Assembly (NCBI RefSeq): GCF_036588685.1
Contig: NC_086377.1
Location: 39,742,001-39,806,000, forward strand
From: Mytilus trossulus
Taxonomy: Eukaryota
Direction: 5' to 3'
DNA: 64,000 nt
Part shown: positions 10,522 through 61,967 of the stretch, one piece after another
Layout: each line of letters begins with the position of its first letter
How positions within the stretch are numbered: position 1 is the stretch's first letter
Made by a program: the position numbers and the translations under genes
The notes under the pieces: generated by a model
What the model saw: only the letters and a program-made list of their open reading frames with translations
Databases searched by the model: none
Told to the model about the DNA's origin: nothing

Positions 10522-10591
10522 ATGTGGGTGTTTTCCCTTATATCCACAACGTTTTTTATATGTTTCCCCGTCGTTGAAGGACAAGATGAAG
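10522..10591 (+). CDS. SRCR-TSP1 membrane protein, signal-peptide exon (exon starts 10465)
   Basis: MWVFSLISTTFFICFPVVEG-QDEG then G|gtaagt donor, phase 1; acceptor tttttaag at 10464; possible non-coding upstream exon ending 10068 (C|gtaagt). Confidence 0.75.
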
Positions 10592-31922: not shown

Positions 31923-33824
31923 TAGTCGGTAAGATAAACTCGTTACACGGTGTGTCAGTGACGTAATACGATATAAATGTGGTCAGTAAATTATATATTG
32001 GGATTTTACTGACCACATACATGTATATATCGTATTTGGCCATAAGGACATGTCGCAACTAACAATTCTGTAAACATATTTATAGATTTCTGATTGGTGA
32101 TAACAAGTTTTAGAAATAACAAGAAAAACAGTGTTTGGGGAGATAACTCTTACATATTAACGTATTCTGATCCGCAATGCCAGTTTCAAAAGCGTGATAA
32201 CTGTTCGACATCATATTCCAATTATCTAATCAACATCTTGCGAAACATCAAACAAACAAACAAACAAACAAAGGAAAAAAAATCGGTGGAAGAAAAAAAA
32301 ATAATATTCAAAACAAAATCAATAGGTCTTTCGACGAAAAATTGGAAAGACATAATAATCAGAACAAAATCAATAGGTCTTTCATCCTAATTGATTAATT
32401 CAAACATATACTATTCATACGATTTAGAACAAATCTTGGAGCCAGATATTAAACAATGTTAAATAATACATTTTGTATTATTTTAACACAAAAAGGATCA
32501 CCGCTAATAGTAGCGTTCCATTTCTATACTATTGTAAAACAAGCATTTTTTGCGCCTGTCCAAAGTCAGGAGCCTCTGGCCTTTGTTAGTCTTGTATTTT
32601 TTTAAATTTTAGTTTTTTGTGTACAATTTGGAGTTCAGTATGGCGTTCATTATCACTGAACTATTGAATATTTGTTTAGGGGCCAGCTGAAGTGAAGGAC
32701 GTCTCCGGGTGCGGGAATTTCTCGATGCATTGAAGACCTGTTAGTGACTTTCTGCTGTTGTCTTCTCTATGGTCGGGTTGTTGTCTCTTTGACAGATACC
32801 CCATTTCCATTCTCATTCTTATATTAAGAAATAATGTGTCATGAAACAAATCTCCAGACTTCATTCTCTACAATTTGTTAACTACAGAGCCTTAACTCCC
32901 ATTTGAATGGTTTCATACTATTTATTTTGGGAGTCTCATGAAGAACAGCAAGCTATAAAAAAAATGACAAGTGTTTAACCATTCAAAAGGGAGTTAACTT
33001 GTTTGAGATAAAATATGAATTATTAAAATGTTTAACTCAGATATTCACAAACTTTCAATAGATATGTTCGAATAAGACACGCATGCTTTTCTTCTAATGT
33101 ATATGTTTCCACAAAGTTAAGGTCTTAACGGTCTTAAGTTCATGTTTGCAATACATGTTTTCAACCATGTATCATAAACTGTACTGATCGATCTACAACC
33201 ATATATGTATCATTCAGTAATAACTAACACACAGTGATTGTAGGCAAAATGTATTATATTCTTGAAAAAGTTGCGTCTCATTTTAGAAATCAATTTAAAT
33301 ATAATGAATGCTGCCGTTCGATGCTTTTCTGATATTTTGTTCGGCTGTTATATTGATTTGTTTCTCATTTTTATCTTCATGAATATATATATATTAAAAA
33401 AATTTAAATTCGCAAACTACATGTCACATCAAATAATAAACAAGTTAACTCCCGTTTGAATGGTTCTTCACTTGTATATATATGTACGTATAATTCAAAA
33501 CTATAATACATTCAACAATCTGCAGGAATTATTTTGCTATGGAAATACATGGTCAGTTGTAATTTTATTTGGACATTGTTAGGTAATTTCCCTCAAGTAT
33601 CATGTCTCACGTGAACAGTACAAAAAACAAATTATGTAAAACATAATTTTGTGTTAGTGCTACCTTAACACGTATAAGGTCATGTTTTAATCACAATCTG
33701 CGTAATAGTGTTTTTTGTATATCATTTCGTAATGGTATTTACCGTCATTTGGTGGTATATAAAACGAAAGCTTTCCCATTCTTTTATTAAACGTATTTAT
33801 TCAAAACAGTTATACAGATTATAC

Positions 33825-34944
33825 ATGGCATCTGATGTTGCCTTCAAAGATGCCGTTGGTGACCTATCCTTTTCCTTGTACAATGCAGTGGAAAAAAGTG
33901 GGAATGAAGTGATTTCTCCATACAGTATAACAAGTGCACTGATGCTTTTGATGCTCGGGACTTGTGGTACTACAAACAAACAAATGAGATCTTCGCTGTT
34001 CAAATAAAACATAGCTGGGGATGTCAACATCGGGTACAAACTTCTCAACGATAAACTGTCATCACTAACAAGGAATGGAGTACAGATTTCGATTGGTAAC
34101 ATACTTTTTGGAGATAACGAATTAAATGTATTGAACACATTAACTACGAATGCTTTAAAATACTACGGTAGCGATTTTAAAGGCATGAATTTTAAATCGG
34201 CACCAGATCAACCAAGAATCAGCGTCAATAATTGAATTGCAAACGCAACGAGAGAAAAAATTAAAAACTTGTTTGCACCTAGTACCATAAATTCGGCAAC
34301 TTTAATGGTTTTAGCCAATGCAATTTACTTTAGAGGTACTTGGATTAAAGAGTTTAACCCGAATAACACAACAAAGAGGAATTTTCTGGACGAATCTAAC
34401 CAGCAAAAAAAAAGTTGATATGATGTATGACCAACGATATGTGAAAACACTGAGTTGAATTGCAAGATTTTGCAACTGCAATACACGGGGAATAAATTTT
34501 CTATAATATTCCTATAACTCAATGATCAAAATGGCCTTCTCAACTTGAAAGTAAAATAAATATGGCAACATTTATAAGTCTGCTTTCTGGGATTAGACGA
34601 CGAGATACAATAATCAGAATTCCAAAATTTACATTTTAACTTAGTATGATTTAAAACCAGTAATTTCAGCATTAGGAATTACTGAAATATTTGATTTTCA
34701 GACATCAAATTTCTCAAATATGACCACCCTAAAACGAGTTTTTGTAAATGACGCTCGCCATAAGTCATTTAAAGAAGTCACAGAACATGGTACGGAAGCT
34801 GCTGCTGCTACAACGGTTCAGATGGTGATGACAAGTTCAATTCGCGGACCATTTCAGTTTGTAGCTGACCATTCATTTATGTTTGTCATACGTGATAATA
34901 ATTCAGTAACTATTATGTTTGTTGGACGGTTTGTTAACCCATGA
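33825..34944 (+). pseudogene. Serpin pseudogene (copy P)
   Basis: Colinear with the intact serpins; CAA-to-TAA at 34005, TGG-to-TGA at 34233, +1 in A-run ~34405-34413, ~10-nt deletion ~34440, further indels; RCL EHGTEAAAATTVQMVMTSSIRG. Confidence 0.95.
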
Positions 34945-37375
34945 ACGAATATAAAGTAAAATTTGTCAGCTTTAATTCATGTTAAATTGTTGTATTTCTA
35001 TTATAAACATAACCTCAATCAATATTGCATTATCTTATTTGAGGTGACTAGATTATAGCGCGTCACGAACATGAACAGTTATGCTGAACAGTGGTGTAGT
35101 CTGTTGGTTTTTTTCCATTCTATTTTGCGATGGATGTTTTTCGCTTATAGTTAAATATTTTCGCAACTATTCAATTCCTGAGTGTGATCTAACATGTTTA
35201 CATGCTTTGATTTTTTATTGCATACACAGTTCATCTCATAATTCGATTTCTTTTATCTATAGTAATGATTAAGATACAGCAATATCATTTATACAGAAAT
35301 ATATAATCAACATAATAAAAACACTACCTTTAGAAAACACATAAACCTGCATAAAGTCGAAGAGCTTTAAAAGATCCACTAGACCTGTACAGTTTTTTTC
35401 TGTTTCAAGTAAACGAAAACGTTTCAACATACACGAGTTTGCATACCGAAACACGACGGGTGTCACGTGTGTGCCTCTTGAAAGCCTGACTGCGATCACC
35501 TCCGATATAAGGTGTGTATATGTGATCCATGATTTTATGCTATTTGCTATGTAATTTTTCATTGAAAATAAATATATAAGAGAAAGGAACACTTGTATGA
35601 TTTTATTAAATATATACATCCAAAAAATGTAATTTAATAACTGATAATTTATATCAATGTTCAATCATTATCACATGTATCCCCTTTTTAGGTGGTTTAC
35701 ATTAGTTAAAACATAAACTCACCATAGTTTGTTGCGGACACTTGAATTAAAGTCAGCCATGAGTTCATAAATGCCATAGTTTTAATATATTAATGATGCA
35801 AATGAAAATGTTTCTTATTGTTTTGTTACCATGGGTACGAAATGCTTAGTTTTTTTCTGTGAAATTAACTTTTTCAATCTTTTTTAATACAATTGTTTCA
35901 AAACCTTATTCGGCAGTCAGACAAAAATGAGTAAATATACATTTTGTAGAAATATTTGTTATCATTAAATTTAAAACCTAGTCATGCATGACTGTATTAA
36001 TTTTTTAACTGTGTTGCTATGAAAACAATTTCATGATGATATCCAAACGTTTGTTTCTCAAAAAAGCACGAAAGAAATAAAAATAAAACAACCTCCGATA
36101 AATTAAGTTTTACATACTTGGTATATATATGTGTAAAGCTCAGAATCGCTTTCATTCCCCAAACGTATCCATTTGACGTCGCTGAACTGCAAATATTTGT
36201 AGTTGCTGAAAAGCGCAAAAAACATGTCTTTTTATGAACACTCAATTGTATCCATTTTTTTAAACGCCATTCCGTGTCATTTCCCCTTAAACGTAGCATA
36301 TAGGTCAAAATCATCTCCTATTTAAAAGACAAGAAAACTAGAAGTCATTATTGCAATACCCTTAAAGGTAGTATAAGGCCTATCCGGAGTATATTAACAC
36401 AAATTAATTTGCTAAGAAAGCAGTGGACTTAACTGTACAAATTCGTTAATTGCAATTTTTACATTTGCTCTAAAGATGCATGAAATATTTCCTTCTAGAC
36501 AGGGATAAATCAACAGGCAATAGTTATGCAATGCTAATAAATTACCACAACAGTGAAGAATTGGGTAAACTTCCAACATTAAAAGTACATCCATATTCAA
36601 TTTAAAACGATGAGAATCTTATTTATAAAATGATTAATAAAACCGCTCTAAGTAGAAATAACTTTTTATTGTGTCATTCTTTACGTTATCTGGTATCTGT
36701 TTATTTATAAACAGAAGTCACTGTGCAGTGCTTAGCATAAATTGGACATTTGTCTATACGGATTACTACATCTTTTCTCCAGGAAGCCATAGGTGTGGCT
36801 TCCATAAAAAAAAAATTTGAATCCAACCGAATCCCGACTTTTTTTTTTATCGTAACCGCATCGTTGAATGTTCACTTTATTGACGTTATTGAGGATATAT
36901 TAGGGCTAAACATTTTGAGATGTCTTGCGTTCTAACGCTTTGGTGAATTACAATTATCGGACATGTTTGGGCGATTGATAATTTTAAAGACAAATGAACT
37001 TAGATACATATAGCAATAGACAATTTTTCATACATTTTGCAGGTTTTTGTTGTGTTTGTGAAATATAAATAATATTCCAGGTAGAATTAGTGAAGTATTG
37101 CCTAAGTAACAACAAATAATATGCATAAAATATGCATAAAATTGAATAACGCTAAAAAAATTACGGTAACCTTAATTTCTTTTACAAGAACTCAGATCTG
37201 TAAGTTTTCAATTCAATGCATTTTCATGATTTCTACCAGTCAGTCCATCAACTATTATTAAAATTATGTAGAGAAGATTAAAGATCAAACTGCAACTTAG
37301 TGTTAAAAGTTTGAAATTATAGCCGCTAGCTCTAAACAATTCATACACAATAACATTTGATTTTAGTGTTTTGAC

Positions 37376-38028
37376 ACCAGACTCAAGCTGGCAGCCACTT
37401 TTATCGGCCAATCAAGTTAGCAGCCACTTTTTTCCAGCAGCCAATTTTGACGATATGTCTAAAAACCAAAAAACTGCATGAGACTCAAACGATCCAAAAA
37501 TCGCTAAATCTTAGTTTAATATAGTTAAACAGCGGAATTCGACAATTTCGCGGCTTGTTCTGATTTTAAAAGCATTTCCTTACGTTTTAAATATGTATGT
37601 GAAGTAAGCTACCGGTTTGTTATTTGATATTCGATATTCAATATACAACCGGTTGCAAGCAGTCGATTCAATATCAAATTTTAGTTGAAAATCATTAAAC
37701 AGTATGATTTCATAGTTAACAGGAGTGACAAATTACGCCTAAATAGTTTCATGACCCCTTCAAGCTATCGTAAATTCTCGTTGTCCTCGAATATAAACCC
37801 TTATATAAGTTGCATATTTGTCTTTATGTAATCAAGATTTTTATCAATAAAACGATATAAAGATTCACCAAAGATTTAATTTAATTTATAATATATAAAA
37901 CTACAACTAAAGTCAGCCATTCTAAAAACATTCCAAAATATGAAAAGAAATATCTATGGAAAGCCAAAAAAAGAATAAATATATTGTGAAAACCTACGGG
38001 AGACCGCTCAGATGACAGTTAGACCCCT
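37376..38028 (+). repeat. Left terminal inverted repeat
   Basis: Reverse complement of 44526-45177, about 90% identical by eye, first 41 bp perfect. Confidence 0.92.
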
Positions 38029-38130
38029 GGTGTTTCAATACTCCAAATGTAACGATATTATAGACTCTGTAGTATATCAAATTGGGTGTAGAGATTAACG
38101 TGACTATAAGGATCTTGGATAATGGGTATT

Positions 38131-41100
38131 GAAAATACATAAATGGGCAACTTTGAACCTCTGTGGAGGCCAGACGGGCCCGGATCCCAGAAAAAAATAT
38201 TTAAGTGGGGAATAGCTTGGGTTAATACCTTTCAAATGAGCTAGGTCCGTTTCGGAACTTTGCCGTAGGGATATGCCGAAGAGTACCGAATGTAAAGTTG
38301 ATATGAAAAATACGTAAATGGGCAACTTTGAACCTCTGTGGTGGTCAGACGGGCCCGGATCCCAGAAAAATATTTAAGTGGGGAATAGCTTGGGTTAATA
38401 CCTTTAAAATGAGCTAGGTCCGGTTCGGAACTTTGCCGTAGGGATATGCCGAAGAGTACCGAATGTGTAGTTGATATGAAAAATACGTAAATGGGCAACT
38501 TTGAACCTCTGTGGTGGTCAGACGGGCCCGGATCCCAGAAAAATATTTAAGTGGGGAATAGCTTGGGTTAATACCTTTAAAATGAGCTAGGTCCGGTTCG
38601 GAACTTTGCCGTAGGGATATGTCGAAGAGTACCGAATGTGAAGTTGATATGAAAAATACGTAATTGCAACTTTGAACCTCTCTGGTGGCCAGACGGGCCC
38701 GGATCCCAGAAAAAATATTTAAATGGGGAATAGCTTGGGTTAATACCTTTAAAATGAGCTAGGTCCGGTTCGGAACTTTGCCGTAGGGATATGTCGAAGA
38801 GTACCGAATGTGAAGTTGATATGAAAAATACGAAAATGGGCAACTTTGAACCTCTCTGGTGGCCAGACGGGCCCGGATCCCAGAAAAAATATTTAAGTGG
38901 GGAATAGCTTGGGTTAATACCTTAAAAATGAGCTAGGTCCAGTTCGGAACTTTGCCGTAGGGATATGCCGAAGAGTACCGAATGTGTAGTTGATATGAAA
39001 AATACGTAAATGGGCAACTTTGAACCTCTGTGGTGGTCAGACGGGCCCGGATCCCAGAAAAATATTTAAGTGGGGAATAGCTTGGGTTAATACCTTTAAA
39101 ATGAGCTAGGTCCGGTTCGGAACTTTGCCGTAGGGATATGCCGAAGAGTACCGAATGTGTAGTTGATATGAAAAATACGTAAATGGGCAACTTTGAACCT
39201 CTGTGGTGGTCAGACGGGCCCGGATCCCAGAAAAATATTTAAGTGGGGAATAGCTTGGGTTAATACCTTTAAAATGAGCTAGGTCCGGTTCGGAACTTTG
39301 CCGTAGGGATATGCCGAAGAGTACCGAATGTGTAGTTGATATGAAAAATACGTAAATGGGCAACTTTGAACCTCTGTGGAGGCCAGACGGGCCCGGATCC
39401 CAGAAAAAAATATTTAAGTGGGGAATAGCTTGGGTTAATACCTTTCAAATGAGCTAGGTCCGTTTCGGAACTTTGCCGTAGGGATATGCCGAAGAGTACC
39501 GAATGTAAAGTTGATATGAAAAATACGTAAATGGGCAACTTTGAACCTCTGTGGTGGTCAGACGGGCCCGGATTCCAGAAAAATATTTAAGTGGGGAATA
39601 GCTTGGGTTAATACCTTTAAAATGAGCTAGGTCCGGTTCGGAACTTTGCCGTAGGGATATGCCGAAGAGTACCGAATGTGTAGTTGATATGAAAAATACG
39701 TAAATGGGCAACTTTGAACCTCTGTGGTGGTCAGACGGGCCCGGATCCCAGAAAAATATTTAAGTGGGGAATAGCTTGGGTTAATACCTTTAAAATGAGC
39801 TAGGTCCGGTTCGGAACTTTGCCGTAGGGATATGTCGAAGAGTACCGAATGTGAAGTTGATATGAAAAATACGTAATTGCAACTTTGAACCTCTCTGGTG
39901 GCCAGACGGGCCCGGATCCCAGAAAAAATATTTAAATGGGGAATAGCTTGGGTTAATACCTTTAAAATGAGCTAGGTCCGGTTCGGAACTTTGCCGTAGG
40001 GATATGTCGAAGAGTACCGAATGTGAAGTTGATATGAAAAATACGAAAATGGGCAATTTTGAACCTCTCTGGTGGCCAGACGGGCCCGGATCCCAGAAAA
40101 AATATTTAAGTGGGGAATAGCTTGGGTTAATACCTTAAAAATGAGCTAGGTCCAGTTCGGAACTTTGCCGTAGGGATATGCCGAAGAGTACCGAATGTGT
40201 AGTTGATATGAAAAATACGTAAATGGGCAACTTTGAACCTCTGTGGTGGTCAGACGGGCCCGGATCCCAGAAAAATATTTAAGTGGGGAATAGCTTGGGT
40301 TAATACCTTTAAAATGAGCTAGGTCCGGTTTGGAACTTTGCCGTAGGGATATGTCGAAGAGTACCGAATGTGAAGTTGATATGAAAAATACGTAAATGGG
40401 CAACTTTGAACCTCTGTGGTGGCCAGACGGGCCCGGATCCCAGAAAAATATTTAAGTGGGGAATAGCTTGGGTTTAAACCTTTGAAATGAGCTAGGTCCG
40501 GTTCGAAACTTTGCCGTAGGGATATGCCGAAGAGTACCGAATAGGTAGTTGATATGAAAAATACGTAAATGGGCAACTTTGAACCTCTGTGGTGGCAAAA
40601 CGGGCCCGGATCCCAGAAAAAAATATTTAAGTGGGAAATAGCTTGGGTTAATACCTTTAAAATGAGCTAGGTCCGGTTCGGAACTTTGCCGTAGGGATAT
40701 GCGGAAGAGTACCGAATGTGAAGTTGATATGAAAAATACGTAAATGGGCAACTTTGAACCTCTGTGGTGGTCAGACGGGCCCGGATCTCAGAAAAATATT
40801 TAAGTGGGGAATAACTTGAGTTAATACCTTTAAAATGAGCTAGGTCCGGTTTCGGAACTTTGCCGTAGGAATATGTCGAAGAGTACCGAATGTGAAGTTG
40901 ATATGAAAAATACGTAAATGGGCAACTTTGAACCTCTGTGGTGGCCAGACGGGCCCGGCTCCCATAAAAATATTTAAGTGGGGAATAGCTTGGGTTTAAA
41001 CCTTTGAAAGTAGCTAGGTCCGGTTCGGAACTTTGCCGTAGGGATATGCCGAGGAGTACCGAATGTGTAGTTGATATGAAAAATACGTAAATGGGCAACT

Positions 41101-43980
41101 TTGAAACTCTGTGGTAGCCAGACGGGCCCGGATCCCAGAAAAAAATATTTAAGTGGGGAATAGCTTGGGTTAATACCTTTAAAATGAGCTAGGTCCGGTT
41201 CGGAACTTTGCCGTAGGGATATGCGGAAGAGTACCAAATGTGTAGTTGATATGAAAAATACGTAAATGGGGAACTTTGAACCTCTGTGGTGGTCAGACGG
41301 GCCCGGATCCCAGAAAAATATTTAAGTGGGATTTAGCTTGGGTTAATACCTTTAAAATGAGCTAGGTCCAGTTCGGAACTTTGCCGTAGGGATATGTCGA
41401 AGAGTACCGAATGTGAAGTTGATATGAAAAATACGAAAATGGGCAACTTTGAACCTCTGTGGTGGCCAGACGGGCCCGGATCCCAGAAAAAATATTTAAG
41501 TGGGGAATAGCTTGGGTTAATACCTTTAAAATGAGCTAGGTCCAGTTCGGAACTTTGCCGTAGGGATATGCCGAAGAGTACCGAATGTGTAGTTGATATG
41601 AAAAATACGTAAATGGGCAACTTTGAACCTCTGTGGTGGCCAGACGGGCCCGGATCCCAGAAAAATATTTAAGTGGGGAATAGCTTGGGTTTAAACCTTT
41701 GAAATGAGCTAGGTCCGGTTCGGAACTTTGCCGTAGGGATATGCAGAAGAGTACCGAATAGGTAGTTGATATGAAAAATACGTAAATGGGCAACTTTGAA
41801 CCTCTGTGGTGGCCAAACGGGCCCGGATCCCAGAAAAAAATATTTAAGTGGGGAATAGCTTGGGTTAATACCTTTAAAATGAGCTAGGTCCGGTTCGGAA
41901 CTTTGCCGTAGGGATATGCGGAAGAGTACCGAATGTGTAGTTGATATGAAAAATACGTAAATGGGCATCTTTGAACCTCTGTGGTGGTCAGACGGGCCCG
42001 GATCCCAGAAAAACATTTAAGTGGGAAATAGCTTGGGTTAATACCTTTAAAATTAGCTAGGTCCGGTTCGGAACTTTGCCGTAGGGATATGTCGAAGAGT
42101 ACCGAATGTGAAGTTGATATGAAAAATACGTAAATGGGCAACTTTAAACCTCTGTGGTGGTCAGACGGGCCCGGATCCCAGAAAAATATTTAAGTGGGGA
42201 ATAGCTTGAGTTAATACCTTTAAAATGAGCTAGGTCCGGTTCGGAACTTTGCCGTAGGAATATGTCGAAGAGTACCGAATGTGAAGTTGATATGAAAAAT
42301 ACGTAAATGGGCAACTTTGAACCTCTGTGGTGGCCAGACGGGCCCGGATCCCATAAAAATATTTAAGTGGGGAATAGCTTGGGTTTAAACCTTTGAAATG
42401 AGCTCGGTCCGGTTCGGAACTTTGCCGTAGGGATATGCCGAAGAGTACCGAATGTGTAGTTGATATGAAAAATACGTAAATGGGCAACTTTGAACCTCTG
42501 TGGTGGCCAGACGGGCCCGGATCCCAGAAAAAAATATTTAAGTGGGGAATAGCTTGGGTTAATACCTTTAAAATGAGCTAGGTCCGGTTCGGAACTTTGC
42601 CGTAGGGATATGCGGAAGAGTACCGAATGTGTAGTTGATATGAAAAATACGTAAATGGGCAACTTTGAACCTCTGTGGTGGTCAGACGGGCCCGGATCCC
42701 AGAAAAATATTTAAGTGGGAAATAGCTTGGGTTAATACCTTTAAAATGAGCTAGGTCCAGTTCGGAACTTTGCCGTAGGGATATGTCGAAGAGTACCGAA
42801 TGTGAAGTTGATATGAAAAATACGTAAATGGGCAACTTTGAACCTCTGTGGTGGCCAGACGGGCCCGGATCCCATAAAAATATTTAAGTGGGGAATAGCT
42901 TGGGTTAATACCTTTAAAATGAGCTAGGTTCGGTTCGGAACATTGCCGTAGGGATATGCAGAAGAGTACCGAATGTGTAGTTGATATGAAAAATACGTAA
43001 ATGGGCAACTTTGAACCTCTGTGGTGGTCAGACGGGCCCGGATCCCAGAAAAATATTTAAGTGGGGAATAGCTTGGGTTAATACCTTTAAAATGAGCTAG
43101 GTCCGGTTCGGAACTTTGCCGTAGGGATATGTCGAAGAGTACCGAATGTGTAGTTGATATGAAAAATACGTAAATGGGCAACTTTGAACCTCTGTGGTGG
43201 CCAGACGGGCCCGGATCCCAGAAAAATATTTAAGTGGGGAATAGCTTGGGTTAATACCTTTAAAATGAGCTAGGTCCGGTTCGGAACTTTGCCGTAGGGA
43301 TATGTCGAAGAGTACCGAATGTGTAGTTGATATGAAAAATACGTAAATGGGCAACTTTGAACCTCTGTGGTGGCCAGACGGGCCCGGATCCCAGAAAAAT
43401 ATTTAATTGGGGAATAGCTTGGGTTACAATGTAATAACTTTGAAATGAGCTAGGTCCGGTTCGGAACTTTGCCGTAGGGATATGGCGAAGAGTACCGAAT
43501 GTGTAGTTGATATGAAAAATACGTAAATGGGCAACTTTGAACCTCTGTGGTGGTCAGACGGGCCCGGATCCCAGAAAAATATTTAAGTGGTGAATGGCTT
43601 GGGCTAATACCTTTGAAATGAGCTAGGTCCGGTTCGGAACTTTGCCGTAGGGATATGCCGAAGAGTACCGAATGTGTAGTTGATATGAAAAATACGTAAA
43701 TGGGCAACTTTGAACCTCTGTGGTGGTCAGACGGGCCCGGATCCCAGAAAAATATTTAATTGGGGAATAGCTTGGGTTAATACCTTTGAAATGAGCTAGG
43801 TCCGGTTCGGAACTTTGCCGTAGGGATATGCCGAAGAGTACCGAATGTGTAGTTGTAATGAAAAATACGTAAATGGGCAACTTTGAAACTCTGTGGTGGT
43901 CAGACGGGCCCGGATCCCAGAAAAATATTTAAGTGGGTATTAGCTTGGGTTAATACTTTTAAAATGAGCTAGGTCCAGTT
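38131..43980 (+). repeat. 173-bp satellite array, ~34 monomers, ApaI (GGGCCC) and BamHI site in most monomers
   Basis: Monomer aaatgggcaactttgaacctctgtggtggtcagacgggcccggatcccagaaaaatatttaagtggggaatagcttggg... with period 171-175. Confidence 0.97.
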
Positions 43981-44527
43981 CCGTCTGACCACCACAGAGG
44001 TTCAAAGTTGCCCATTTACGTATTTTTCATATCAACTACACATTCGGTACTCTTCGGCATATCCCTACGGCAAAGTTCCGAACCGGACCTAGCTCATTTT
44101 AAAGGTATTAACCCAAGCTATTCCCCACTTAAATATTTTTTCTGGGATCCGGGCCCGTCTGGCCACCACGCAGGTTCAAAGTTGCCCATTTACGTATTTT
44201 TCATATCAATCACACATTCGGTACTCTTCGGTATATCCCTACGGCAAAGTTCCGAACCGGACCTAGCTCATTTTAAAGGTATTGACCCTAGCTATTACCC
44301 ACTTAAATATTTTTCTGGGATCCGGGCCCGTCTGGCCACCACAGAGGTTCAAAGTTGCCCATTTACGTATTTTTCATATCAATCACACATTCGGTACTCT
44401 TCGGTATATCCATACGGCAAAGTTTCGAACCAGACCTAGCTCATTTTAAAGGTATTGACCCAAGCTATTCCCCAATTAAATATTTTTCTGGGATCCGGGC
44501 CCGTCTGGCCACAACAGAGGTTCAAAG
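43981..44527 (-). repeat. Same satellite, inverted, ~3.2 monomers
   Basis: ccgtctgaccaccacagaggttcaaagttgcccattt is the reverse complement of the monomer; abuts the right TIR. Confidence 0.95.
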
Positions 44528-45177
44528 GGTTTTCACTGTCACCTGAGTGGTCTCCCGTAGGTTTCACTATATATTTATTCTTTTTTGGCTTTCCATAGAT
44601 ATTTCTATTTATATTTCTGAATGTTTTTATAGTGGCCGGCTTTAGTTTTATTTTTATATATTATATATTAAATTAAATCTTTGATGAATCTTTAATGTCG
44701 TTTTATTGATAAAAATCGATATTACATAAAGAGAAATATGCAGTTTATATAAGGGTTTATAATCGAGGACAACGATAATTTACGACAGCTTGAAGGGGTC
44801 ATAAAACTATTTGCGGCGTAATTTTTCACTCCTGTTAACTATGAAAATTATACTTTTTAATGATTTTCAACTAAATTTTAATATTGAACCGACTGCTAGC
44901 AACCGTCGGATATTGAATATCGAATATCGAATAACAAACCGGCAGCTAACTTCACATACATATTTTAAACGTAATGAAATGCTTTTAAATTAAGTTCAAG
45001 CCGCGAAACTGTCGAATTCCGCTGTTAAATTATATTTAACTAAGATTTAGCGATTTTTGGAACGTTAGGTCTTATGCAGTTTTTTGGTTTTTAGACATAT
45101 TGTCAAAATTGGCGGCTGGAAAAAAGTGGCTGCTATCTTGATTGGCCGATAAAAGTGGCTGCCAGCTTGAGTCTGGT
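44526..45177 (-). repeat. Right terminal inverted repeat
   Basis: Reverse complement of 37376-38028. Confidence 0.92.
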
Positions 45178-46791
45178 TGTTTTGACGCCATTTTTAACGC
45201 CGTGGCCGCCGTTTTTTTTTTATTTAGGGATGAAGCTGGGTTGCTTTACGAAAACAACCGACCTTCGTTAGGAAAACTATCAATCCTAGTCAATTAAGAT
45301 TGGAGTCGAGTGTACCCGCACGAGCGGGGTACGAACTCTCAACCTTAGTGTTGACTAGCTAGGAATAAAAAATTATATATAAATGAAATTTGACCAGAAA
45401 ACTATTCCTTTATTATCAGCTGTAAAATGTATTATGCATTCATAAATTGAAAGTTGAATTGACATAGCATTTTGAACAATATTGTATTATTGAATGGTAG
45501 AGGTTGATCAACACATCAATTCTATCATGTATTAGAAAGGGAAAAAAAAGAGAAGATCAATTAATTTCACCTTCAAACAAATCACTGAATGTCCACTTTA
45601 TTCGTGTTATAAGTAAAAAAAATAAAGTCAAACAATGCAAAATTTGCAATTTAATACCTTATAAAGTTATAAACAAGACTTCCACTTCACGCTTCAATTG
45701 TATCTCTCTTTTCCCTCTGACCTTGAAGGAAAACTGGCAAGCCGGTGCAAAGATTTGCCGATGAGTACATTTACAAAAAGGAGTACGAAACAGAATAAAC
45801 ATTCACAAACAGGTAAATTGTGCTTTTTTTTTTTATTAGCATATGTTTCTTTTTTCATACACAATGTATTTTTTTACTTTCACTTCGTGTCTGTCATAGT
45901 ATTATTTGTTGGCAGAAAAACTTATGATATAGATAAAAGAGGGGCGAAAGATACCAGAGGGACAGTCAAACTCATAGATTTAAAACGAATTGACAACGCC
46001 AATAAAATATAAAGACAAACAGACACATAATAGTACACAAGACACAACAAAGAAAACTAAAGACTAAGCATCACGAACCCCACCATACAAGGAGATATTG
46101 GCCTGAAAGAAATATATTGACCGAGGACGAACTGTGTGCTTTGAATGATATCGGATATGTTCCTTACGTCGTAACTACAATCCCCTTACCTTTCATGAAT
46201 GTGACCTACCGAATGAGACTATTTACTGGATTTGATATCACATATTAAGCAACACGACGGTTGCCACATGTGGAGCAGGATCTGCTTACCCTTCCGGAGC
46301 ACCTGAGATCATCCCTAGTTTTTGGTGGGGTTCGTGTTGTTTATTCTGTAGTTTTCTATGTTGTGTCATGTGTACTACTGTTTGTCTGTTTGTCTTTTTC
46401 ATTTTAGCCATGGCGTTGTCAGTTTATTTTAGATTTATGAGTTTGACTGTCCATTTGGTATCTTTCGTCCCTCGTTGAAGCACCATAAAACATAATAACA
46501 ACAGCATTTATCATACATGTCTGGAATCCTAATGCTTTACCCATAGCCGATTTCAATATGTTCTTTGTATTGAAAAAAAACACTTCTTTCAAAAACCCAC
46601 ACCAAATGATAAATATGAAGCTATGTTTCAAATTTTTTCGAGATAATGCTTTGAAAAAGAAAATTTCTACATTATGGTTGACTTCTCCATATACATATAC
46701 ACGCACACTTTCAAAGATATCCCTCTCATTATTGCATGAAAATTATACGATTGATATTCAGCAAACCCTATTATGTAATTTTAATATTCGA

Positions 46792-48120: not shown

Positions 48121-49251
48121 ATGGCATCTAATGTTGCTTTCGAAGATGCCGTTGGTGACCTATCCTTTGCTTTATACAATGCAGTGGAAAAAAGTGGGAA
48201 TGAATTGATTTCTCCATACAGTATAACAAGTGCATTGATGCTTCTTATGCTCGGGACTGGTGGTACTACACACAAACAAATGAGATCTTCATTGTTCAAA
48301 CAAAACATAGCTGGTGATGTCAACATGGGGTACAAACTTCTCAACGATAAACTGTCCTCACTAACAGAAAAAGGAGTACAGCTTTCGATTGGTAACAGAC
48401 TTTTTGGGGATAACAAATTAAACGTTTTGAACACATTTACGGAGAATGCTTTACAGTACTACGGTAGCGATTTGAAACGCCTGAACTTTAAATCAGCACC
48501 TGATCAATCAAGAATCAACATCAATAGTTGGATTGCTAACTCAACGAACGATAAAATAAAGAATATGTTGCCACCTAATACTATAACTTCAGGAACTGTT
48601 TTGGTTTTAGTAAATGCAATTTACTTTAAAGGTACTTGGAATAAAGAGTTTAACCCGAATAAAACAAGAAAGAGGAATTTTCTGGACGAATCTAACCAGC
48701 AAAAACAAGTAGATATGATGTATGACCAACGCTTTGTCGTAGCCGGTGAGAATACCGAATTGAATTGCAAGATTTTGCAACTTCAATACACAGGAAGTAA
48801 ATTATCTATGATAATTATTTTACCCAATGATCAAAATGGACTTTCTCAACTTGAAAGTAAAATAAATATGGCAACATTTAAAAGTCTGTTTTCTGGAATG
48901 AGGCGACGAGATACAATAATCAGAATTCCAAAATTTAAATTTCAAGCTATGTATGATTTAAAACCAGTAATTTCAGCATTAGGAATTACTGAAATATTTG
49001 ACTTTCAGACAGCAAATTTCTCAAATATGACCTCCCCAAAAGGAGTTTTTGTAAATGACGCTCGCCATAAGTCATTTATAGAAGTCACAGAACATGGTAC
49101 GGAAGCTGCTGCTGCTACAACAGTTCAGATGGTGATGACAAGTTCATTTGGCGGACCATTTCAGTTTGTAGCTGACCATCCATTTATGTTTGTCATACGT
49201 GATAATAATTCAGGAACTATTCTGTTTGTTGGACGGTTTGTTAACCCATGA
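48121..49251 (+). CDS. Serpin (inhibitory-type hinge), 376 aa, intronless CDS, copy 1
   Basis: ISPYSITSAL, LVNAIYFKGTW, IPKFK, EVTEHGTEAAAAT hinge, FVADHPFMFVIRD..SGTILFVGRFVNP signature; predicted P1-P1' Thr-Ser. Confidence 0.97.
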   Translation: MASNVAFEDAVGDLSFALYNAVEKSGNELISPYSITSALMLLMLGTGGTTHKQMRSSLFKQNIAGDVNMGYKLLNDKLSSLTEKGVQLSIGNRLFGDNKLNVLNTFTENALQYYGSDLKRLNFKSAPDQSRININSWIANSTNDKIKNMLPPNTITSGTVLVLVNAIYFKGTWNKEFNPNKTRKRNFLDESNQQKQVDMMYDQRFVVAGENTELNCKILQLQYTGSKLSMIIILPNDQNGLSQLESKINMATFKSLFSGMRRRDTIIRIPKFKFQAMYDLKPVISALGITEIFDFQTANFSNMTSPKGVFVNDARHKSFIEVTEHGTEAAAATTVQMVMTSSFGGPFQFVADHPFMFVIRDNNSGTILFVGRFVNP

Positions 49252-51662: not shown

Positions 51663-54600
51663 AGTAGACAATTTTGCTTGTATATTATATCATAACGGTA
51701 TTAGCAAATGAAAGAAAAAAGTACACACTTTCTCAAATCTAAATAAAAGTGCGGATTATGAGAAAATCTGTCTGTTTTCATGAACATGAAAAACATACAA
51801 GAAAAACAAATACTTAGTATAGAAAAACATATCAAATTAATAATTTTATGTTACAATTGTGAAATTTTTGCCATTAAATGTGTTGCAACGGGAACAAGCA
51901 GTCTATTTGTATATTCTATGTGTAGTTACTGAAAAATTTTGAAAAAAAATATTTTGATGACCTTAGATACATATAGCAGTATACAATTTTTCATACATTA
52001 TGCAGGTTTTGTTGTGTTTGTGAAATAAAAATAATAATCCAGGTAGAATTAGTGAAGTGTTGCCAAAGTAACAAAAAATAATATGCATAAAATTGAATAA
52101 TGTTCAAAACATTACGGTAACCTTAATTTCTCATACAAGAACTCAGATCTGTAAGTTTTCCATTCAATGCATTTTCAAAGAATAATGATTTCTTCCAGTC
52201 AGTCCATCATTTATTATTAAAATTATGTAGTGAAGATAAAGATCAAATTGCAACTTGGTGTTGAAAGTTGAAATTATAGCCGCTAGCTCTAAACAATTTA
52301 TACACACAATAACATTTGATCTTAGTGTTTTGACGCCATTTTTAACGCCATGGCCGCCAGTTTTTTTAAAACTTTATTTAGGGAAGAAGCTGGGTTGCTT
52401 CACGAAAACAACCGACCTTCGATAGGAAAACAAACAATCCTAGTCATTTAAGATTGGAGTCGAGTGTACCCGCACGAGCGGGGTTCGAACTCTCGACTTT
52501 AGTGTTGACTAGCTAGGGTTGAAAAATTATATATAAATGAAATTTGACCGGAAAACTTTTCCTTTATTATCAGCTGTAAAATGTACTATGCATTCATAAA
52601 TTGAATGTTGAATTGACATAACATGTAAAGCCATACATTTTGAACAATATTGTATTATTTAATGGTAGGTGTTTATCAACACATCAATTTTATCATGTAT
52701 TAGAAAGGAAAAAAAAAGAGAAGATCAATTAATTTCACCTTCAAACAAATCACTGAATGTCCACTTCATACATGTGATAAGTAAAACAAAATTAAAGTCG
52801 AACAATGCAAAAATTTGCAATTTAATACCTTATAAAGTTATAACACAGACTGCCACTTCACGCTTCAATTTTATCTCTCTTTTCCCTCTGACCTTGAAGG
52901 AATACTATTATGCCGATGCAAAGATTTTCCGATGAGTACATTTACAAAAAAGGAGTACGAAACAGAATAAACATTCAGGTAAATTGTGTTTTTTTTTATG
53001 AGCACATGTTTCTTTATTCATACACAAGGTATTTTTTTACTTTCAATTCGTGTCTGTCATAGTATTATGTACTGGCAGAATTTTTTTTTATATAGATAAA
53101 AAAGAGGGGCGAAATATACCAGAGGGACAGTCAAACTCATAGATTTAAAATGAATTGGCAACACCAATAAAATATAAAGACAAACAGACAAATAATAGTA
53201 CACAAGACACAACAAAGAAAACTAAAGACTAAGCATCACGAACCCCACAAAAAACCGGGTGTGATCTCAGGTGCTCCGGAAGGGTTGGCAGATCCTGCTC
53301 CACATGTTGCACAACTATATACAAGCTCCATACAAGGAGATATTGGCCTGAAAGAAGTGTATTGACCGAGGACGAACTTTTTGCGTATGAACCACTTTAT
53401 GCACCATTTAAATAAAAACAACAGCACTTACCATACATGTCTGGAATCTGTATACTTTATCCATAGCCGTTGAAAACATGAATTCAATAAGTACTATATA
53501 TTGTAAAAGAAAACTTCTTTGAAAAACCCACAACAGATGATAAATTTGAAGCTCTATATATCTTTGAAAAACACAATTTCTACATTATGGTGTACTTCTC
53601 CATATGCATTTACGCGCATACTTTCCAAGATAGCCCTCTCATTATTGCATAGAAATTGTAAGATTGATATTCAACAAACCGTATTATGTAATTTTAATAT
53701 TTTAAACAAGACTGTGTTCATCGTATACAGATGTCCCTCTCGAACTATCATTTTTCATGTTCAGTTCACCGTGAAATTGGTGGTCAAATCTCTAATTTGT
53801 CATTAAAATTATAAAGATCATATCTTTGATAACATGTGTACTTTGTTTTCAACTTCAACTTTGTCAAATACGACCTTGATCAAACTTTAACTTGAAGTGG
53901 GACAAATGGACAAACGAACAAACGGACGAACGGGTCAACGGGCGAACGAATAGACGGACGGACAGACAACTAAATAACCAAACGATCGAACGGGCGGACA
54001 GACAACTAAATAACCGGACGATCGAACGGACGGATTGACGAACGAACGTACGAATGTCCGAACGAACAGACATACAGACCGAAAACAGGATCTCCTTAAG
54101 TGAGGATTAAAAATTGTGTACTAAAGTTTGTTTTAATGTATGACAATATGTTACATTGATAATATCATGTATACAGGATAACTGTGTGCTGTCCATGATA
54201 TTATACGATCACATTACGACCTTGATGTAACAGTTATGTCACGTTCCACATCTAGTTCATGTTTGTAAGTTTCTGCAAAGAATGTATAGTAATTTATTGA
54301 GTTTATTTAATTATTTAGGTTGGTTTATATGCGAAATGTGTCGGATGAAACAATAATAGAAACATACGCGTATCTAAAGAATGATATACCGAGCTAGATT
54401 GAAAATTTGTAGCATTTTAACACAAAGGGATAAACGCTTTTTTGGTAAAATTTTAATAATCAAAAAAATATATACATTGTATCGTGAAACAAAATCGCCA
54501 GACTTCAACCTATACTTAAATGAGTAATCAACATGTTGAACTCAGATATTCAAAAACTATTAAAGGCTGTTTTCGAATATGACACACAAACTTTTCCTTA

Positions 54601-55117
54601 AATGTATACAACTATTTATGGAATTTTAATTACAAACAACAGTGCTTGTAAGCTAAATGGTTTAGATTATCAAAACATTGTAAGTAGCTTTTCATTTTGG
54701 AAATCAATAGATATACAACGATTGATGCCCTTCGATGTTTTTGGAAGTTTTTGTTTGTCATGTTATATTTTATCTTCATCATAATTATATGAGTAGAATG
54801 AAAAACTATATTACATTGAACTAAATGATATAACAATATATGCATATACAGTTATATTATCATTTGGACACTTTTAGGGAATTTCCCGCAAGTCTCATGT
54901 CTTACGTGCACAGTATAAAAAAAGATAATTGCGTAAAACTGTATTAACATTTTGTATTTAGTGCAACAAAAAAAAGTGTATAAGGTCATATGATTTAAAT
55001 CAACATCGAAGAATATTCGTAATAATAAATGTTAATCATTTCGTAATGAAATTTACCGTCATGTTGGTGGTATATAAGAATGAAAGCTTTCTCATTCTTT
55101 TATTAAACAGCTTAAAC

Positions 55118-58517: not shown

Positions 58518-61500
58518 AGTAGACAATTTTTCTAGTATATTATATCATAACGGTATTAGCAAATGAAAGAAAAAAGTACACACTTTCTCAAATCTAAATA
58601 AAAGTGCGGATTATGAGAAAATCTGTCTGTTTTCATGAACATGAAAAACATACAAGAAAAACAAATACTTAGTATAGAAAAACATATCAAATTAATAATT
58701 TTATGTTACAATTGTGAAATTTTTGCCATTAAATGTGTTGCAACGGGAACAAGCAGTCTATTTGTATATTCTATGTGTAGTTACTGAAAAATTTTGAAAA
58801 AAAATATTTTGATGACCTTAAATACATATACCAGTATACAATTTTTCATACATTATGCAGGTTTTGTTGTGTTTGTGAAATAAAAATAATAATCCAGGTA
58901 GAATTAGTGAAGTGTTGCCTAAGTAACAAAAAATAATATGCATAAAATTGAATAATGCTCAAAACATTACGGTAACCTTAATTTCTCATACAAGAACTCA
59001 GATCTGTAAGTTTTCCATTCAATTCATTTTCAAAGAATAATGATTTCTTCCAGTCAGTCCATCAATTATTATTAAAATTATGTAGTGAAGATAAAGATCA
59101 AATTGCAACTTGGTGTTGAAAGTTTGAAATTATAGCCGCTAGCTCTAAACAATTTATACACAATAACATTTGATCTTAGTGTTTTGACGCCATTTTTAAC
59201 GCCATGGCCGCCAGTTTTTTTTTAAACTTTATTTAGGGATTAAGCTGGGTTGCTTCACGAAAACAACCGACCTTCGATAGGAAAACAAACAATCCTAGTC
59301 ATTTAAGATTGGAGTCGAGTGTACCCGCACGAGCGGGGTTCGAACTCTCGACTTTAGTGTTGACTAGCTAGGGTTGAAAAATTATATATAAATGAAATTT
59401 GACCGGAAAACTTTTCCTTTATTATCAGCTGTAAAATGTACAATGCATTCATAAATTGAATGTTGAATTGACATAACATGTAAAGCCATACATTTTGAAC
59501 AATATTGTATTATTTAATGGTAGGTGTTGATCAACACATCAATTTTATCATGTATTAGAAAGGAAAAAAAAAGAGAAGATCAATTAATTTCACCTTCAAA
59601 CAAATCACCGAATGTCCACTTCATACATGTGATAAGTAAAACAAAATTAAAGTCGAACAATGCAAAAATTTGCAATTTAATACCTTATAAAGTTATAAAC
59701 AAGACTGCCACTTCACGCTTCAATTTTATCTCTCTTTTCCTTCTGACCTTGAAGGAATACTGTTATGCCGGTGCAAAGATTTTCCGATGAATACATTCAC
59801 AAAAAAGGAGTACGAAACAGAATACATTCAGGTAAATTGTGTTTTTTTTATGAGCACATGTTTCTTTATTCATACACAAGGTATTTTTTTACTTTCAATT
59901 CGTGTCTGTCATAGTATTATGTGCTGGCAGAAAAATTTGTTATATAGATAAAAGAGGGACGAAAGATACCAGAGGGACAGTCAAACTCATAGATTTAAAA
60001 TGAATTGGCAACGCCAATAAAATATAAAGACAAACAGACAAATAATAGTACACAAGACACAACAATGAAAACTAAAGACTAAGCATCACGAACCCCACCA
60101 AAAACCGGGGGTGATCTCAGGTGCTCCGGAAGGGTTGGCAGATCCTGCTCCACATGTTGCACAACTATATACAAGCTCCATACAAGGAGATATTGGCCTG
60201 AAAGAAGTGTATTGACCGAGGACGAACTTTTTGCGTATGAACCACTTTATGCACCATTTAAATAATAACAACAGCACTTACCATACATGTCTGGAATCTG
60301 TATACTTTATCCATAGCCGTTGAAAACATGAATTCAATTAGCACTATATATTGTAAAAGAAAACTTCTTTGAAAAACCCACAACAGATGATAAATTTGAA
60401 GCTCTATATATCTTTGAAAAACACAATTTCTACATTATGGTGTACTTCTCCATATGCATTTACACGCATACTTTCCAAGATAGCCCTCTCATTATTGCAT
60501 AGAAATTGTAAGATTGATATTCAACAAACCGTATTATGTAATTTTAATATTTTAAACAAGACTGTGTTCATCGTATACAGATGCCCCTCTCGAACTATCA
60601 TTTTTCATGTTCATTTCACCGTGAAATTGGTGGTCAAATCTCTAATTTGTCATTAAAATTATAAAGATCATATCTAGGCTAACATGTGTACTTTGTTTTC
60701 AACTTCAACTTTGTCAAATACGACCTTGATCAAACTTTAACTTGAAGTGGGACAAATGGACAAACGAACAAACGGACGAACGGGCCAACGGGCGAACGAA
60801 TGGACGGACGGACAGACACCTAAATAACCAAACGATCGAACGGACGGACAGACAACTAAATAACCGGACGATCGAACGGACGGATTGACGAACGAACGAT
60901 CGAATGTCCGAACGAACAGACGTACAGACCGAAAACAGGATTTCCTTAAGTGGGGATTAAAAATTGTGTACTAAAGTTTGTTTTAATGTATGACAATATA
61001 TTACATTGATAATATTACGTATACATGATAACTGTGTGCTGTCCATGATATTATACGATCACATTACGACCTTGATGTAACAGTTATGTCACGTTCCACA
61101 TCTAGTTCATGTTTGTAAGTTTCTGCAAAGAATGTATAGTAATTTATTGAGTTTATTTAATTATTTAGGTTGGTTTATATGCGAAATGTGTCGGATGAAA
61201 CAATAATAGAAACATACGCGTATCTAAAGAATGATATACCGAGCTAGATTGAAAATTTGTAGCATTTTAACACAAAGGGATAAACGCTTTTTTGGTAAAA
61301 TTTTAATAATCAAAAAAATATATACATTGTATCGTGAAACACAATCGCCAGACTTCAAGCTATACTTAAATGAGTAATCAACATGTTGAACTCAGATATT
61401 AAAAAACTATTAAAGGCTGTTTTCGAATATGACACACAAACTTTTCCTTAAATGTATGCAACTATCTATGGAACTTTAATTACAAACAATAGTGCTTGTA

Positions 61501-61967
61501 AGCTAAATGGTTTAAATTATCAAAACATTGTAAGTCGCTTCTCATTTTGGAAATCAATAGATATACAACGATTGATGCCCTTCGATGTTTTTGGAAGTTT
61601 TTGTTTGTCATGTTATATTTTATCTTCATCATAAGTATATGAGTAGAATGAAAAACTATATTACATTGAACTAAATGATATAACAATATATGCATATACA
61701 GTTATATTATCATTTGGACACTTTTAGGGAATTTCCCGCAAGTCTCATGTCTCACGTGCACAGTATAAAAAAAGATAATTGCGTAAAACTGTATTAACAT
61801 TTTGTATTTAGTGCAACAAAAACAAGTGTATAAGGTCATATGATTTAAATCATCATCGAAGAATTTGCGTAATAATAAATGTTAATCATTTCGTAATGAA
61901 ATTTACCGTCATTTTGGTGGTATATAAGAAAAAAAGCTTTCTCATTCTTTTATTAAACAGCTTAAAC

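What the first reader, a model, noticed from the sequence alone, without database searches (positions are those of the whole stretch)
37367..45186. A satellite-DNA array that moved as a transposon: 7.8-kb Foldback/MULE-like element with 9-bp TSD filled with a 173-bp ApaI satellite
Seen: ~650-bp inverted arms (37376-38028 / 44526-45177), a perfect 9-bp duplication tgttttgac on both sides, and the same site present once in both paralogous spacers (52326, 59180). The window therefore contains its own empty-site controls. Between the arms there is no transposase, only ~37 satellite monomers pointing inward from each arm. Established: long TIRs with 9-bp TSDs typify Mutator-like elements, and tandem repeats inside the inverted arms typify Foldback elements. 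From recall and unverified, a ~173-bp ApaI satellite is a classical major satellite of Mytilus. Inference: this satellite may be the internal TIR module of a Foldback-type transposon family, which would seed arrays into gene-rich euchromatin, here an immune gene cluster.
Basis: partly seen in the sequence, partly recalled or inferred. Interest (0 to 1): 0.88.

Follow-up and report, generated by a model that had tools for sequence, protein, structure and literature searches.

The report
Mussel satellite carried inside foldback transposon
A 7.8-kb block of the 173-bp mussel satellite in a serpin gene cluster is one copy of a family of about 70 foldback transposons, and in this Mytilus trossulus assembly nearly all sampled copies of that satellite lie inside this family, whose full-length members also carry a dead virus-like polymerase-integrase core.

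Summary
Window 37376-45177 is bounded by 644-bp inverted arms (90% identical) and a perfect 9-bp duplication. Two paralogous spacers keep the uninterrupted site. One detail is wrong: the satellite is 34 monomers inward from the left arm and only 3.2 from the right.

It belongs to a real family in this genome (Mytilus trossulus by protein naming). The terminal 23-mer occurs 143 times against 0 for the control, and + and - termini pair up 1.8-77 kb apart. Eleven of 14 elements checked have different, perfect 9-bp duplications. Every arm is followed by the satellite in the same orientation. About 6,000 monomers exist, and 20 of 22 sampled arrays lie inside arm-bounded elements. Monomers are homogenised within each array, so arrays grow in place.

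New here: many members carry a shared 5.6-kb centre, a decayed protein-primed DNA polymerase B plus a truncated rve/chromodomain integrase (Maverick/Polinton type). Stop codons are shared between copies, so the family spread when already non-autonomous. The window copy has lost this centre. No MULE transposase was found in the family, and the mobilising enzyme is unknown.

Another first-stage note of this scan (s1-818523) describes the same kind of element elsewhere in this genome. This is a new variant of a known kind (Tetris-like foldback elements).

The parts
37367..37375 (.). Left copy of the 9-bp target site duplication (TGTTTTGAC)
37376..38028 (+). Left terminal inverted arm (outer domain, variant A). 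Terminus ACCAGACTCAAGC..., with three subterminal copies of the RGCAGCCAMTTTT motif within the first 73 bp
38029..38131 (+). 103-bp inner arm segment. It lies between arm and satellite in most genomic copies and is absent from this element's right arm
38132..43980 (+). Satellite array, 34 monomers of 173 bp (ApaI site), pointing inward from the left arm; 94.7% mean identity among them
43981..44527 (-). Satellite array, 3.2 monomers in the opposite orientation, pointing inward from the right arm. The inversion point 43980/43981 joins monomer position 120 to position 46
44528..45177 (-). Right terminal inverted arm (variant B, without the 103-bp segment)
45178..45186 (.). Right copy of the 9-bp target site duplication
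52326..52334 (.). Empty (uninterrupted) paralogous target site in the next tandem unit
59180..59188 (.). Empty (uninterrupted) paralogous target site in the following tandem unit

Best explanation
Window 37376-45177 is a non-autonomous foldback-type DNA transposon. It inserted as one unit into the spacer between two serpin paralogues after the spacer had been duplicated, and the insertion made a 9-bp staggered-cut duplication.

It belongs to a family of roughly 70 elements in this Mytilus trossulus assembly. Each half of a family member is a ~650-bp outer arm, usually followed by a 103-bp inner segment, followed by an array of the 173-bp ApaI-site satellite that always points inward.

Full-length members have a 5.6-kb middle domain at the centre of the palindrome. 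It is a dead relic of a Maverick/Polinton-like unit: a protein-primed DNA polymerase B, and convergent to it an rve/chromodomain integrase that lacks its N-terminal third. That relic was already full of stop codons when the family spread, so it is a passenger and not the engine. The window copy, like other small copies, lost the middle domain by its own internal deletion.

Shown: the insertion, the TSDs, the family, the confinement of the satellite to the family, in-place homogenisation and growth of the arrays, and the dead core.

Inferred: mobilisation in trans by a DDE enzyme that recognises the conserved termini and subterminal motifs. From the 9-bp TSD I rate a Mutator/Foldback-type transposase about 50%, an integrase of the live pPolB-integrase elements of the same genome about 30%, and something else about 20%.
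For: - Arms, TSD and two internal empty-site controls.
- The terminal 23-mer occurs 73 times forward and 70 times reverse against 0 for the control. Plus and minus termini pair at 1.8-77 kb.
- All 30 arms fetched end sharply at the same terminus with unrelated flanks, and each is followed by the satellite in the same orientation.
- 10 of 13 fully fetched elements, plus the C3 pair, have perfect and mutually different 9-bp TSDs.
- The satellite 23-mer occurs 5,975 times. All 100 listed hits and 92 of 94 hits of a rare variant lie in arm-bounded elements.
- Monomer identity is 94-99.9% within an element against 91.7% between elements, and is higher on the same side than on the opposite side. A 346-bp dimer periodicity runs across 22.6 kb in the C3 element.
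- The shared 5.6-kb centre is present in at least 30 places at 91-97% identity.
- pPolB homology: E = 1e-78 to 1e-99, colinear over residues ~150-1365 of an intact genomic pPolB.
- The integrase piece has intact relatives that lie next to intact pPolB genes. Its full-length database relatives are rve + Chromo. Only the C-terminal two thirds are present in the core.
- 26 stop positions are shared by at least 3 of 5 copies. dN/dS is 1.16 between close copies and 0.67-0.82 to a 76%-identical second core lineage.
- The inversion points of core-less copies all differ.
- The window arms are closest (97-98.3%) to arms of other elements, and the C17 element shows the same A/B arm combination.
Against: - No enzyme has been tied to these termini. 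None of 96 MULE-domain hits lies inside a listed element, and none of the 83 exact-terminus sites lies beside an intact integrase or pPolB.
- 3 of 13 elements lack a matching TSD.
- The two arms of the window copy differ by 9%. This is explained by two arm variants but also allows later exchange with other copies.
- The inversion point at 43980/43981 was not bridged by any listed public contig, so this one assembled junction is unverified.
Confidence: 0.8

Rival explanations
1. The family is a degenerate Maverick/Polinton lineage. Arm plus satellite are its overgrown terminal inverted repeats, the pPolB-integrase core is the ancestral coding part, and copies are moved in trans by the integrase of living pPolB-integrase elements of the same genome. 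That integrase clade would then make 9-bp rather than 5-6-bp duplications.
For: The core sits exactly at the palindrome centre, between oppositely oriented arrays, in every core-bearing copy. Two core lineages only 76% identical both sit between these arms. The convergent order pPolB then integrase equals that of intact gene pairs on C7, C2 and C3. Many intact, near-identical pPolB (1253-aa frame) plus integrase (290-aa frame) pairs exist and could supply enzymes. dN/dS of 0.67-0.82 between the lineages hints at some past constraint.
Against: From established knowledge, described Maverick/Polinton insertions have 5-6-bp TSDs and AG...CT termini; here the TSD is 9 bp and the termini are AC...GT. 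The integrase lacks its N-terminal third in all copies, and the pPolB carried many shared stops before the spread. There is no room for capsid, ATPase or protease genes in 5.6 kb. No exact-terminus site lies next to an intact pPolB or integrase.
Confidence: 0.3
2. The structure is not a transposition product but an assembly artefact or a local rearrangement of a satellite array (for example a mis-joined palindrome).
For: Inverted satellite arrays are hard to assemble. The inversion point at 43980/43981 is not bridged by any listed public contig.
Against: The outer junctions are exact, with a 9-bp duplication and two empty paralogous sites. At least 10 other elements at unrelated loci repeat the same architecture with their own TSDs. 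Contigs of two runs start matching exactly at 45178, as an uninterrupted allele would. An artefact could affect at most the internal monomer count or the position of the switch.
Confidence: 0.03
3. It is a member of the bivalve tandem-repeat-carrying Helitron/Helentron derivatives (pearl, MgE, Cg_HINE type), which are already known to disperse satellite-like repeats.
For: It is a bivalve and the monomer length is similar (~160-170 bp). Such elements are described for Mytilus (MgE) and oysters (PMC7492417, read).
Against: Those elements carry a single array in one fixed orientation between non-inverted flanks and make no TSD (PMC7492417 for the fixed orientation; the absence of a TSD is established knowledge for Helitrons). 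Here there are 650-bp inverted arms, inverted arrays and 9-bp TSDs.
Confidence: 0.02

Closest known systems
Tetris foldback transposon of Drosophila virilis (Dias et al. 2014, PMC4079207)
   Same: An outer TIR domain is followed by internal tandem repeats (220 bp there, 173 bp here). It has a variable non-coding middle domain, 8-10-bp TSDs, no autonomous copy found, and the TIR repeats also form kb-size satellite-like arrays.
   Different: Here at least 11 complete copies with TSDs were verified and there are ~70 termini pairs, against 3 complete copies there. Element spans reach 77 kb. In the samples taken the satellite is almost wholly inside the elements rather than also forming free arrays. 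The monomer shows no similarity to the arm. The middle domain is a recognisable dead pPolB-integrase module.
Drosophila melanogaster FB elements (FB-NOF, FB4) and other foldback elements assigned to Mutator
   Same: Long inverted arms built largely of tandem repeats, a 9-bp TSD, an optional foreign middle domain, and frequent internal deletions (established knowledge; the Mutator link is cited in PMC4079207).
   Different: No Mutator-type transposase is associated here. The outer arm is a unique 650-750-bp sequence rather than a graded set of short repeats. The middle domain is of Maverick/Polinton origin.
Maverick/Polinton self-synthesising transposons (polintoviruses)
   Same: Full-length family members hold a protein-primed family B polymerase and an rve integrase with a C-terminal chromodomain, between long inverted ends.
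   Different: Both genes are dead and the integrase is truncated. There are no capsid, ATPase or protease genes. The TSD is 9 bp instead of 5-6 bp and the termini differ. The window copy has no coding remnant at all.
Bivalve satellite-carrying Helentron/pearl/MgE elements (PMC7492417)
   Same: They are mobile elements that spread ~160-170-bp satellite-like repeats through bivalve euchromatin.
   Different: Their mechanism and structure differ: rolling-circle ends, one orientation, no TIR and no TSD.
ApaI (type 1, 173-bp) satellite of Mytilus (Ruiz-Lara et al. 1992; Martinez-Lage et al. 2002, 2005; cited in PMC5874043, details from recall)
   Same: A 173-bp monomer with an ApaI site in a Mytilus genome.
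   Different: Sequence identity to the published clones could not be checked. As far as I know, and as far as the paper searches here show, the published work treats it as a classical satellite and not as part of a transposon.

Membership tests
Foldback-type transposons (FB / Tetris-like) | Long terminal inverted repeats that contain tandem repeats in mirror orientation | tested here: met
   Arms of 644 bp at 90% identity, then 173-bp monomers pointing inward from both sides. The same order is seen in 30 of 30 other arms.
Foldback-type transposons (FB / Tetris-like) | Target site duplication of about 9 bp (8-10) | tested here: met
   Perfect 9-bp TSD here, with two empty paralogous sites. 10 of 13 fully fetched elements (this one included), plus the C3 pair, have perfect and different 9-bp TSDs.
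Foldback-type transposons (FB / Tetris-like) | Multiple dispersed copies with a variable or absent middle domain | tested here: met
   143 termini. The middle is absent, partial, or a 5.6-kb core.
Mutator-like elements (MULE) | MURA-type DDE transposase (Pfam MULE, PF10551) in autonomous members that share the TIRs | tested here: inconclusive
   96 MULE-domain hits in the genome, none inside a listed element. The terminus list is incomplete for sites with one mismatch, and no DNA could be fetched around the MULE genes.
Mutator-like elements (MULE) | 8-11-bp TSD and long TIRs | tested here: met
Maverick/Polinton | Protein-primed family B DNA polymerase gene | tested here: met
   Met for full-length family members only, and as a pseudogene: tblastn E = 1e-78 to 1e-99 against intact genomic pPolB that matches PF03175. 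Absent from the window copy.
Maverick/Polinton | rve-family integrase, typically with a chromodomain | tested here: met
   Remnant only. The 61-aa piece finds rve + Chromo proteins. tblastn covers the C-terminal rve half plus the chromodomain, and the N-terminal third is missing.
Maverick/Polinton | Capsid (major and minor), packaging ATPase and protease genes; size 15-20 kb | tested here: not met
   The core is 5.6 kb and is filled by the two remnants plus about 0.9 kb of spacer. No ORF of 150 aa or more.
Maverick/Polinton | 5-6-bp TSD | tested here: not met
   9 bp in 11 elements.
Helitron/Helentron-derived tandem-repeat carriers (pearl, MgE, Cg_HINE) | No TIR, no TSD, a single array in fixed orientation | tested here: not met
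   TIRs, a 9-bp TSD and inverted arrays are present.
Mytilus ApaI type 1 satellite | 173-bp monomer with an ApaI site | tested here: met
   Period 173, GGGCCC at monomer position 45-50. The genome is named Mytilus trossulus through P0001.
Mytilus ApaI type 1 satellite | Sequence identity to the published clones | not testable with these tools
   No GenBank nucleotide search was available, and the paper library holds no text on it.

The most novel reading that the evidence does not exclude
The mussel 173-bp ApaI satellite is, genome-wide, nothing but the inner repeat of the inverted ends of a transposon lineage descended from a Maverick/Polinton-like self-replicating element. This pPolB-plus-integrase lineage integrates with 9-bp instead of 5-6-bp duplications. 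A virus-like element would then have turned into a foldback satellite-seeding machine that still moves with enzymes from its living relatives.
Probability: 0.3. Interest if true: 0.8.

Novelty: new variant of a known kind. Interest (0 to 1): 0.6.

Why it matters
It gives a concrete, testable mechanism for how a textbook mussel satellite is scattered through gene-rich DNA. Each array sits in a mobile foldback element with defined ends and a target duplication, and then grows in place to tens of kilobases.

Practical and biological consequences:
- The insertions are ready-made presence/absence markers for the Mytilus species complex.
- Palindromes of up to about 77 kb in euchromatin are likely hot spots for inversions and deletions.
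- The family shows that a foldback architecture can surround a Maverick/Polinton relic. This raises the question whether such virus-like elements can decay into foldback elements, or whether foldback elements capture them.

The general idea that satellites arise from transposon end repeats is already known from Tetris in Drosophila and from Helentron-type carriers in oysters.

Tried and rejected
- Pfam on short stop-to-stop pieces of the core gave nothing. The genes were identified only through intact genomic relatives and a full-database phmmer search.
- A first dN/dS estimate built on protein-guided codon maps was invalid. It gave pS of 0.3-0.45 for copies that are 97% identical. It was replaced by a DNA-alignment-based estimate.
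- Paper searches for the ApaI satellite found no text, only reference entries.
- The monomer has no detectable similarity to the arm or the 103-bp segment, so a Tetris-like origin of the repeat from the arm is not supported.
- Only a weak 7-monomer periodicity exists in the window array.
- MULE-domain search: no hit inside a listed element. One intact MULE gene (C2:88675248) lies in a region with three family members, but an equal-scoring copy on C1 has none nearby, so I take it as coincidence.
- Reads: only short contigs of public runs were available.
The ends and TSDs of the intact pPolB-integrase elements therefore could not be examined.
- Helitron-type and assembly-artefact readings were rejected on the tested features.
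Full report
**1. The observation**

The block 37376-45177 is bounded by inverted arms. Positions 37376-38019 match the reverse complement of 44535-45177 over 644 bp at 90.4% identity. Directly outside the termini (the element begins ACCAG and ends CTGGT) the 9-mer TGTTTTGAC is present on both sides, at 37367 and 45178.

The flanks belong to a tandem array of ~6.85-kb units. In the next two units the same 9-mer occurs once, at 52326 and 59180, with the left and right flanks directly joined at about 90% identity. These are true empty-site controls. The fifth copy of the 9-mer, at 57306, is unrelated.

Between the arms there is only a 173-bp tandem repeat with a GGGCCC site. There are 34 monomers on the + strand (38132-43980) and then an abrupt switch to 3.2 monomers on the - strand (43981-44527). 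The left arm also has a 103-bp inner segment (38029-38131) that the right arm lacks.

**2. It is a family**

The window lies at C5:39742001-39806000 of a 1.30-Gb assembly. A protein of the assembly is named Mytilus trossulus, and its contig length equals that of C2.

- The left arm finds many copies at 90-96% identity.
- The terminal 23-mer occurs 73 times forward and 70 times reverse with at most one mismatch, against 0 for the control.
- All 30 arms fetched end at the same terminal base next to unrelated flanks.
- In all 30 the arm is followed by the 103-bp segment (sometimes deleted) and then the satellite in the same orientation.
- Plus and minus termini pair at distances from 1.8 to 77 kb.

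I fetched 12 further complete elements. With the window copy, 10 of 13 have perfect and mutually different 9-bp duplications. The pair on C3, 32.8 kb apart, has one too.

**3. The satellite belongs to the family**

A conserved 23-mer of the monomer occurs 5,975 times, about 1.0 Mb or 0.08% of the assembly. All 100 listed hits, in seven arrays on C1 and C2, lie next to listed termini.

A rare variant (ApaI site mutated) gave a sample spread over the genome. Of its 94 hits, 92 lie in 13 arrays inside or beside arm-bounded elements. Two hits (C11:3.66 Mb and a small contig) could not be assigned.

Word depths of public contigs are only an order-of-magnitude guide. They give satellite: arm: unique-flank ratios in line with the assembly counts, so no large hidden arrays are indicated.

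**4. Arrays grow in place**

- Monomers are more alike within an element (94-99.9%) than between elements (91.7% on average).
- They are more alike on the same side than on the opposite side: in the window 94.7% against 88.6%.
- The C3 element shows a 346-bp dimer periodicity over 22.6 kb.
- Three elements have arms that are 99.5-100% identical. Two of them (the C43 and C10 elements) were among those tested for monomer identity and have nearly identical monomers (98.2-99.9%).

**5. Arms come in two variants**

Variant A has the 103-bp segment and variant B lacks it. The window copy is A on the left and B on the right, as is the element on C17 in the opposite orientation. The window's arms are 97-98.3% identical to their nearest relatives in other elements.

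The 9% difference between the two arms of the window copy is therefore not an age. The insertion looks younger than the ~10% divergence of the duplicated spacers, which fits the empty paralogous sites.

**6. A shared middle domain**

Seven of the 13 elements hold a non-satellite centre, and five of them share a ~5.6-kb sequence at 91-98% identity. A genome search finds it in at least 30 places, many inside listed arm pairs. A sixth element has a 76%-identical version. The centre always lies between oppositely oriented arrays, that is, at the centre of the palindrome. It has no ORF of 150 aa or more.

Intact genomic genes matching Pfam DNA_pol_B_2, with open frames of 1382-1423 aa, align to the centres colinearly over residues ~150-1365 at E = 1e-78 to 1e-99. 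Downstream on the other strand, a 61-aa piece has relatives in intact 264-347-aa frames that lie right beside those intact polymerase genes in the same convergent order. It also has relatives beside a multi-copy set of 1253-aa polymerase frames. A search of 1.84 billion representative proteins with that piece found full-length proteins with an rve core and a C-terminal chromodomain. In the centres only the C-terminal rve half and the chromodomain are present. The N-terminal third is missing at the satellite border. This pair of genes is the replication-integration module of Maverick/Polinton elements. There is no room for their capsid, ATPase or protease genes.

**7. The core was dead when the family spread**

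Twenty-six stop positions are shared by at least three of five copies. dN/dS is 1.16 between two close copies and 0.67-0.82 between the two core lineages. An earlier estimate was invalid.

The core-less copies switch orientation at different monomer phases: 120|46 in the window, and 36|117, 56|141 and 82|160 elsewhere. They therefore lost the core independently.

**8. Which enzyme moves it is not shown**

The 9-bp TSD and the architecture fit Foldback/Mutator-type elements. Tetris of Drosophila virilis is the closest described analogue. However, none of 96 MULE-domain hits lies inside a listed element.

The Maverick-type relic suggests the alternative that related living elements supply an integrase. 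Against this, described Mavericks make 5-6-bp duplications (established knowledge), and no exact-terminus site lies beside an intact integrase.

Three subterminal copies of an RGCAGCCAMTTTT motif within 73 bp of the end are candidate binding sites. My odds are Mutator/FB-type about 50%, Maverick-type integrase about 30%, and other about 20%.

**9. Public reads**

Only short contigs were available, from four coded organisms. All four hold arms and satellite at 95% identity or more. No listed contig bridges the arm-flank junction or the inversion point.

Two contigs, one of 818 nt in run X2 and one of 155 nt in run X1, begin to match exactly at 45178, the first base of the duplication, and their remainder does not fit the arm. 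That is what an uninterrupted allele would give, but the unmatched letters were not shown, so this is only suggestive.

**10. Context and limits**

The tandem units each encode an intronless serpin (376-400 aa; Pfam Serpin, E = 4e-114). The element lies in the spacer upstream of the first intact copy.

Limits:
- The sequence match to the published ApaI satellite could not be made.

An unchecked first-stage note of this scan (s1-818523) describes the same kind of element on another piece of this genome. My analysis reached the same reading independently and tested it.

**Verdict**

This is a new variant of a known kind, of moderate to high interest.

Noticed in passing
window 48121-49251, 55046-56248, 61896-63095 (+); degenerate paralogue around 33554-35193: Tandem array of intronless serpin genes in ~6.85-kb units that are ~90-97% identical. 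Three have intact 376-400-aa ORFs, and the unit upstream of the element has no ORF of 200 aa or more.
   Followed up: partly
G000 C5:74816214/74817981, C5:80712621/80714388, C11:36271657/36273424 and more than 20 similar places: A multi-copy set of apparently intact, near-identical gene pairs: a 1253-aa protein-primed polymerase frame next to a 290-aa integrase-like frame on the opposite strand. It looks like a young Maverick/Polinton-like family. Its ends and TSDs were not examined.
   Followed up: no
L033 (C7:6.72 Mb), L044-L045 (C43:1.58 Mb), L046-L048 (C10:20.9 Mb): Three family members have arms that are 99.5-100% identical. In the two tested for it (C43, C10) the monomers are up to 99.9% identical. 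This means either very recent events or gene conversion between the halves.
   Followed up: partly
L032 (C6:13.86 Mb), L038-L039 (C17:4.89 Mb), L040-L041 (C9:42.64 Mb): Three elements have intact termini but no matching 9-bp duplication. They are candidates for exchange between copies, such as inversions or deletions mediated by the family.
   Followed up: no
L042-L043 (C6:26.45 Mb element, positions ~8500-10700) and L040 (C9:42.64 Mb element): The same extra insert sits in the centre of two elements. It contains a 147-aa frame that by eye resembles the protease region of BEL/Pao-type retrotransposons, which suggests a nested insertion inherited by both.
   Followed up: no
G000 C3:90792976-90815564: A monomer variant with a mutated ApaI site recurs every 346 bp over 22.6 kb. 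This is a two-monomer higher-order repeat inside one element.
   Followed up: partly
window 45178 (runs X1, X2): Public contigs start to match exactly at the first base of the right duplication, and the rest of each contig does not fit the arm. This may be an uninterrupted allele in other individuals.
   Followed up: partly
window 45382-45600 (run X14, organism D): The unique flank has no contig at 95% identity or more in this organism, while arms and satellite do. The family may be better conserved than the surrounding DNA, or the locus may be absent there.
   Followed up: no
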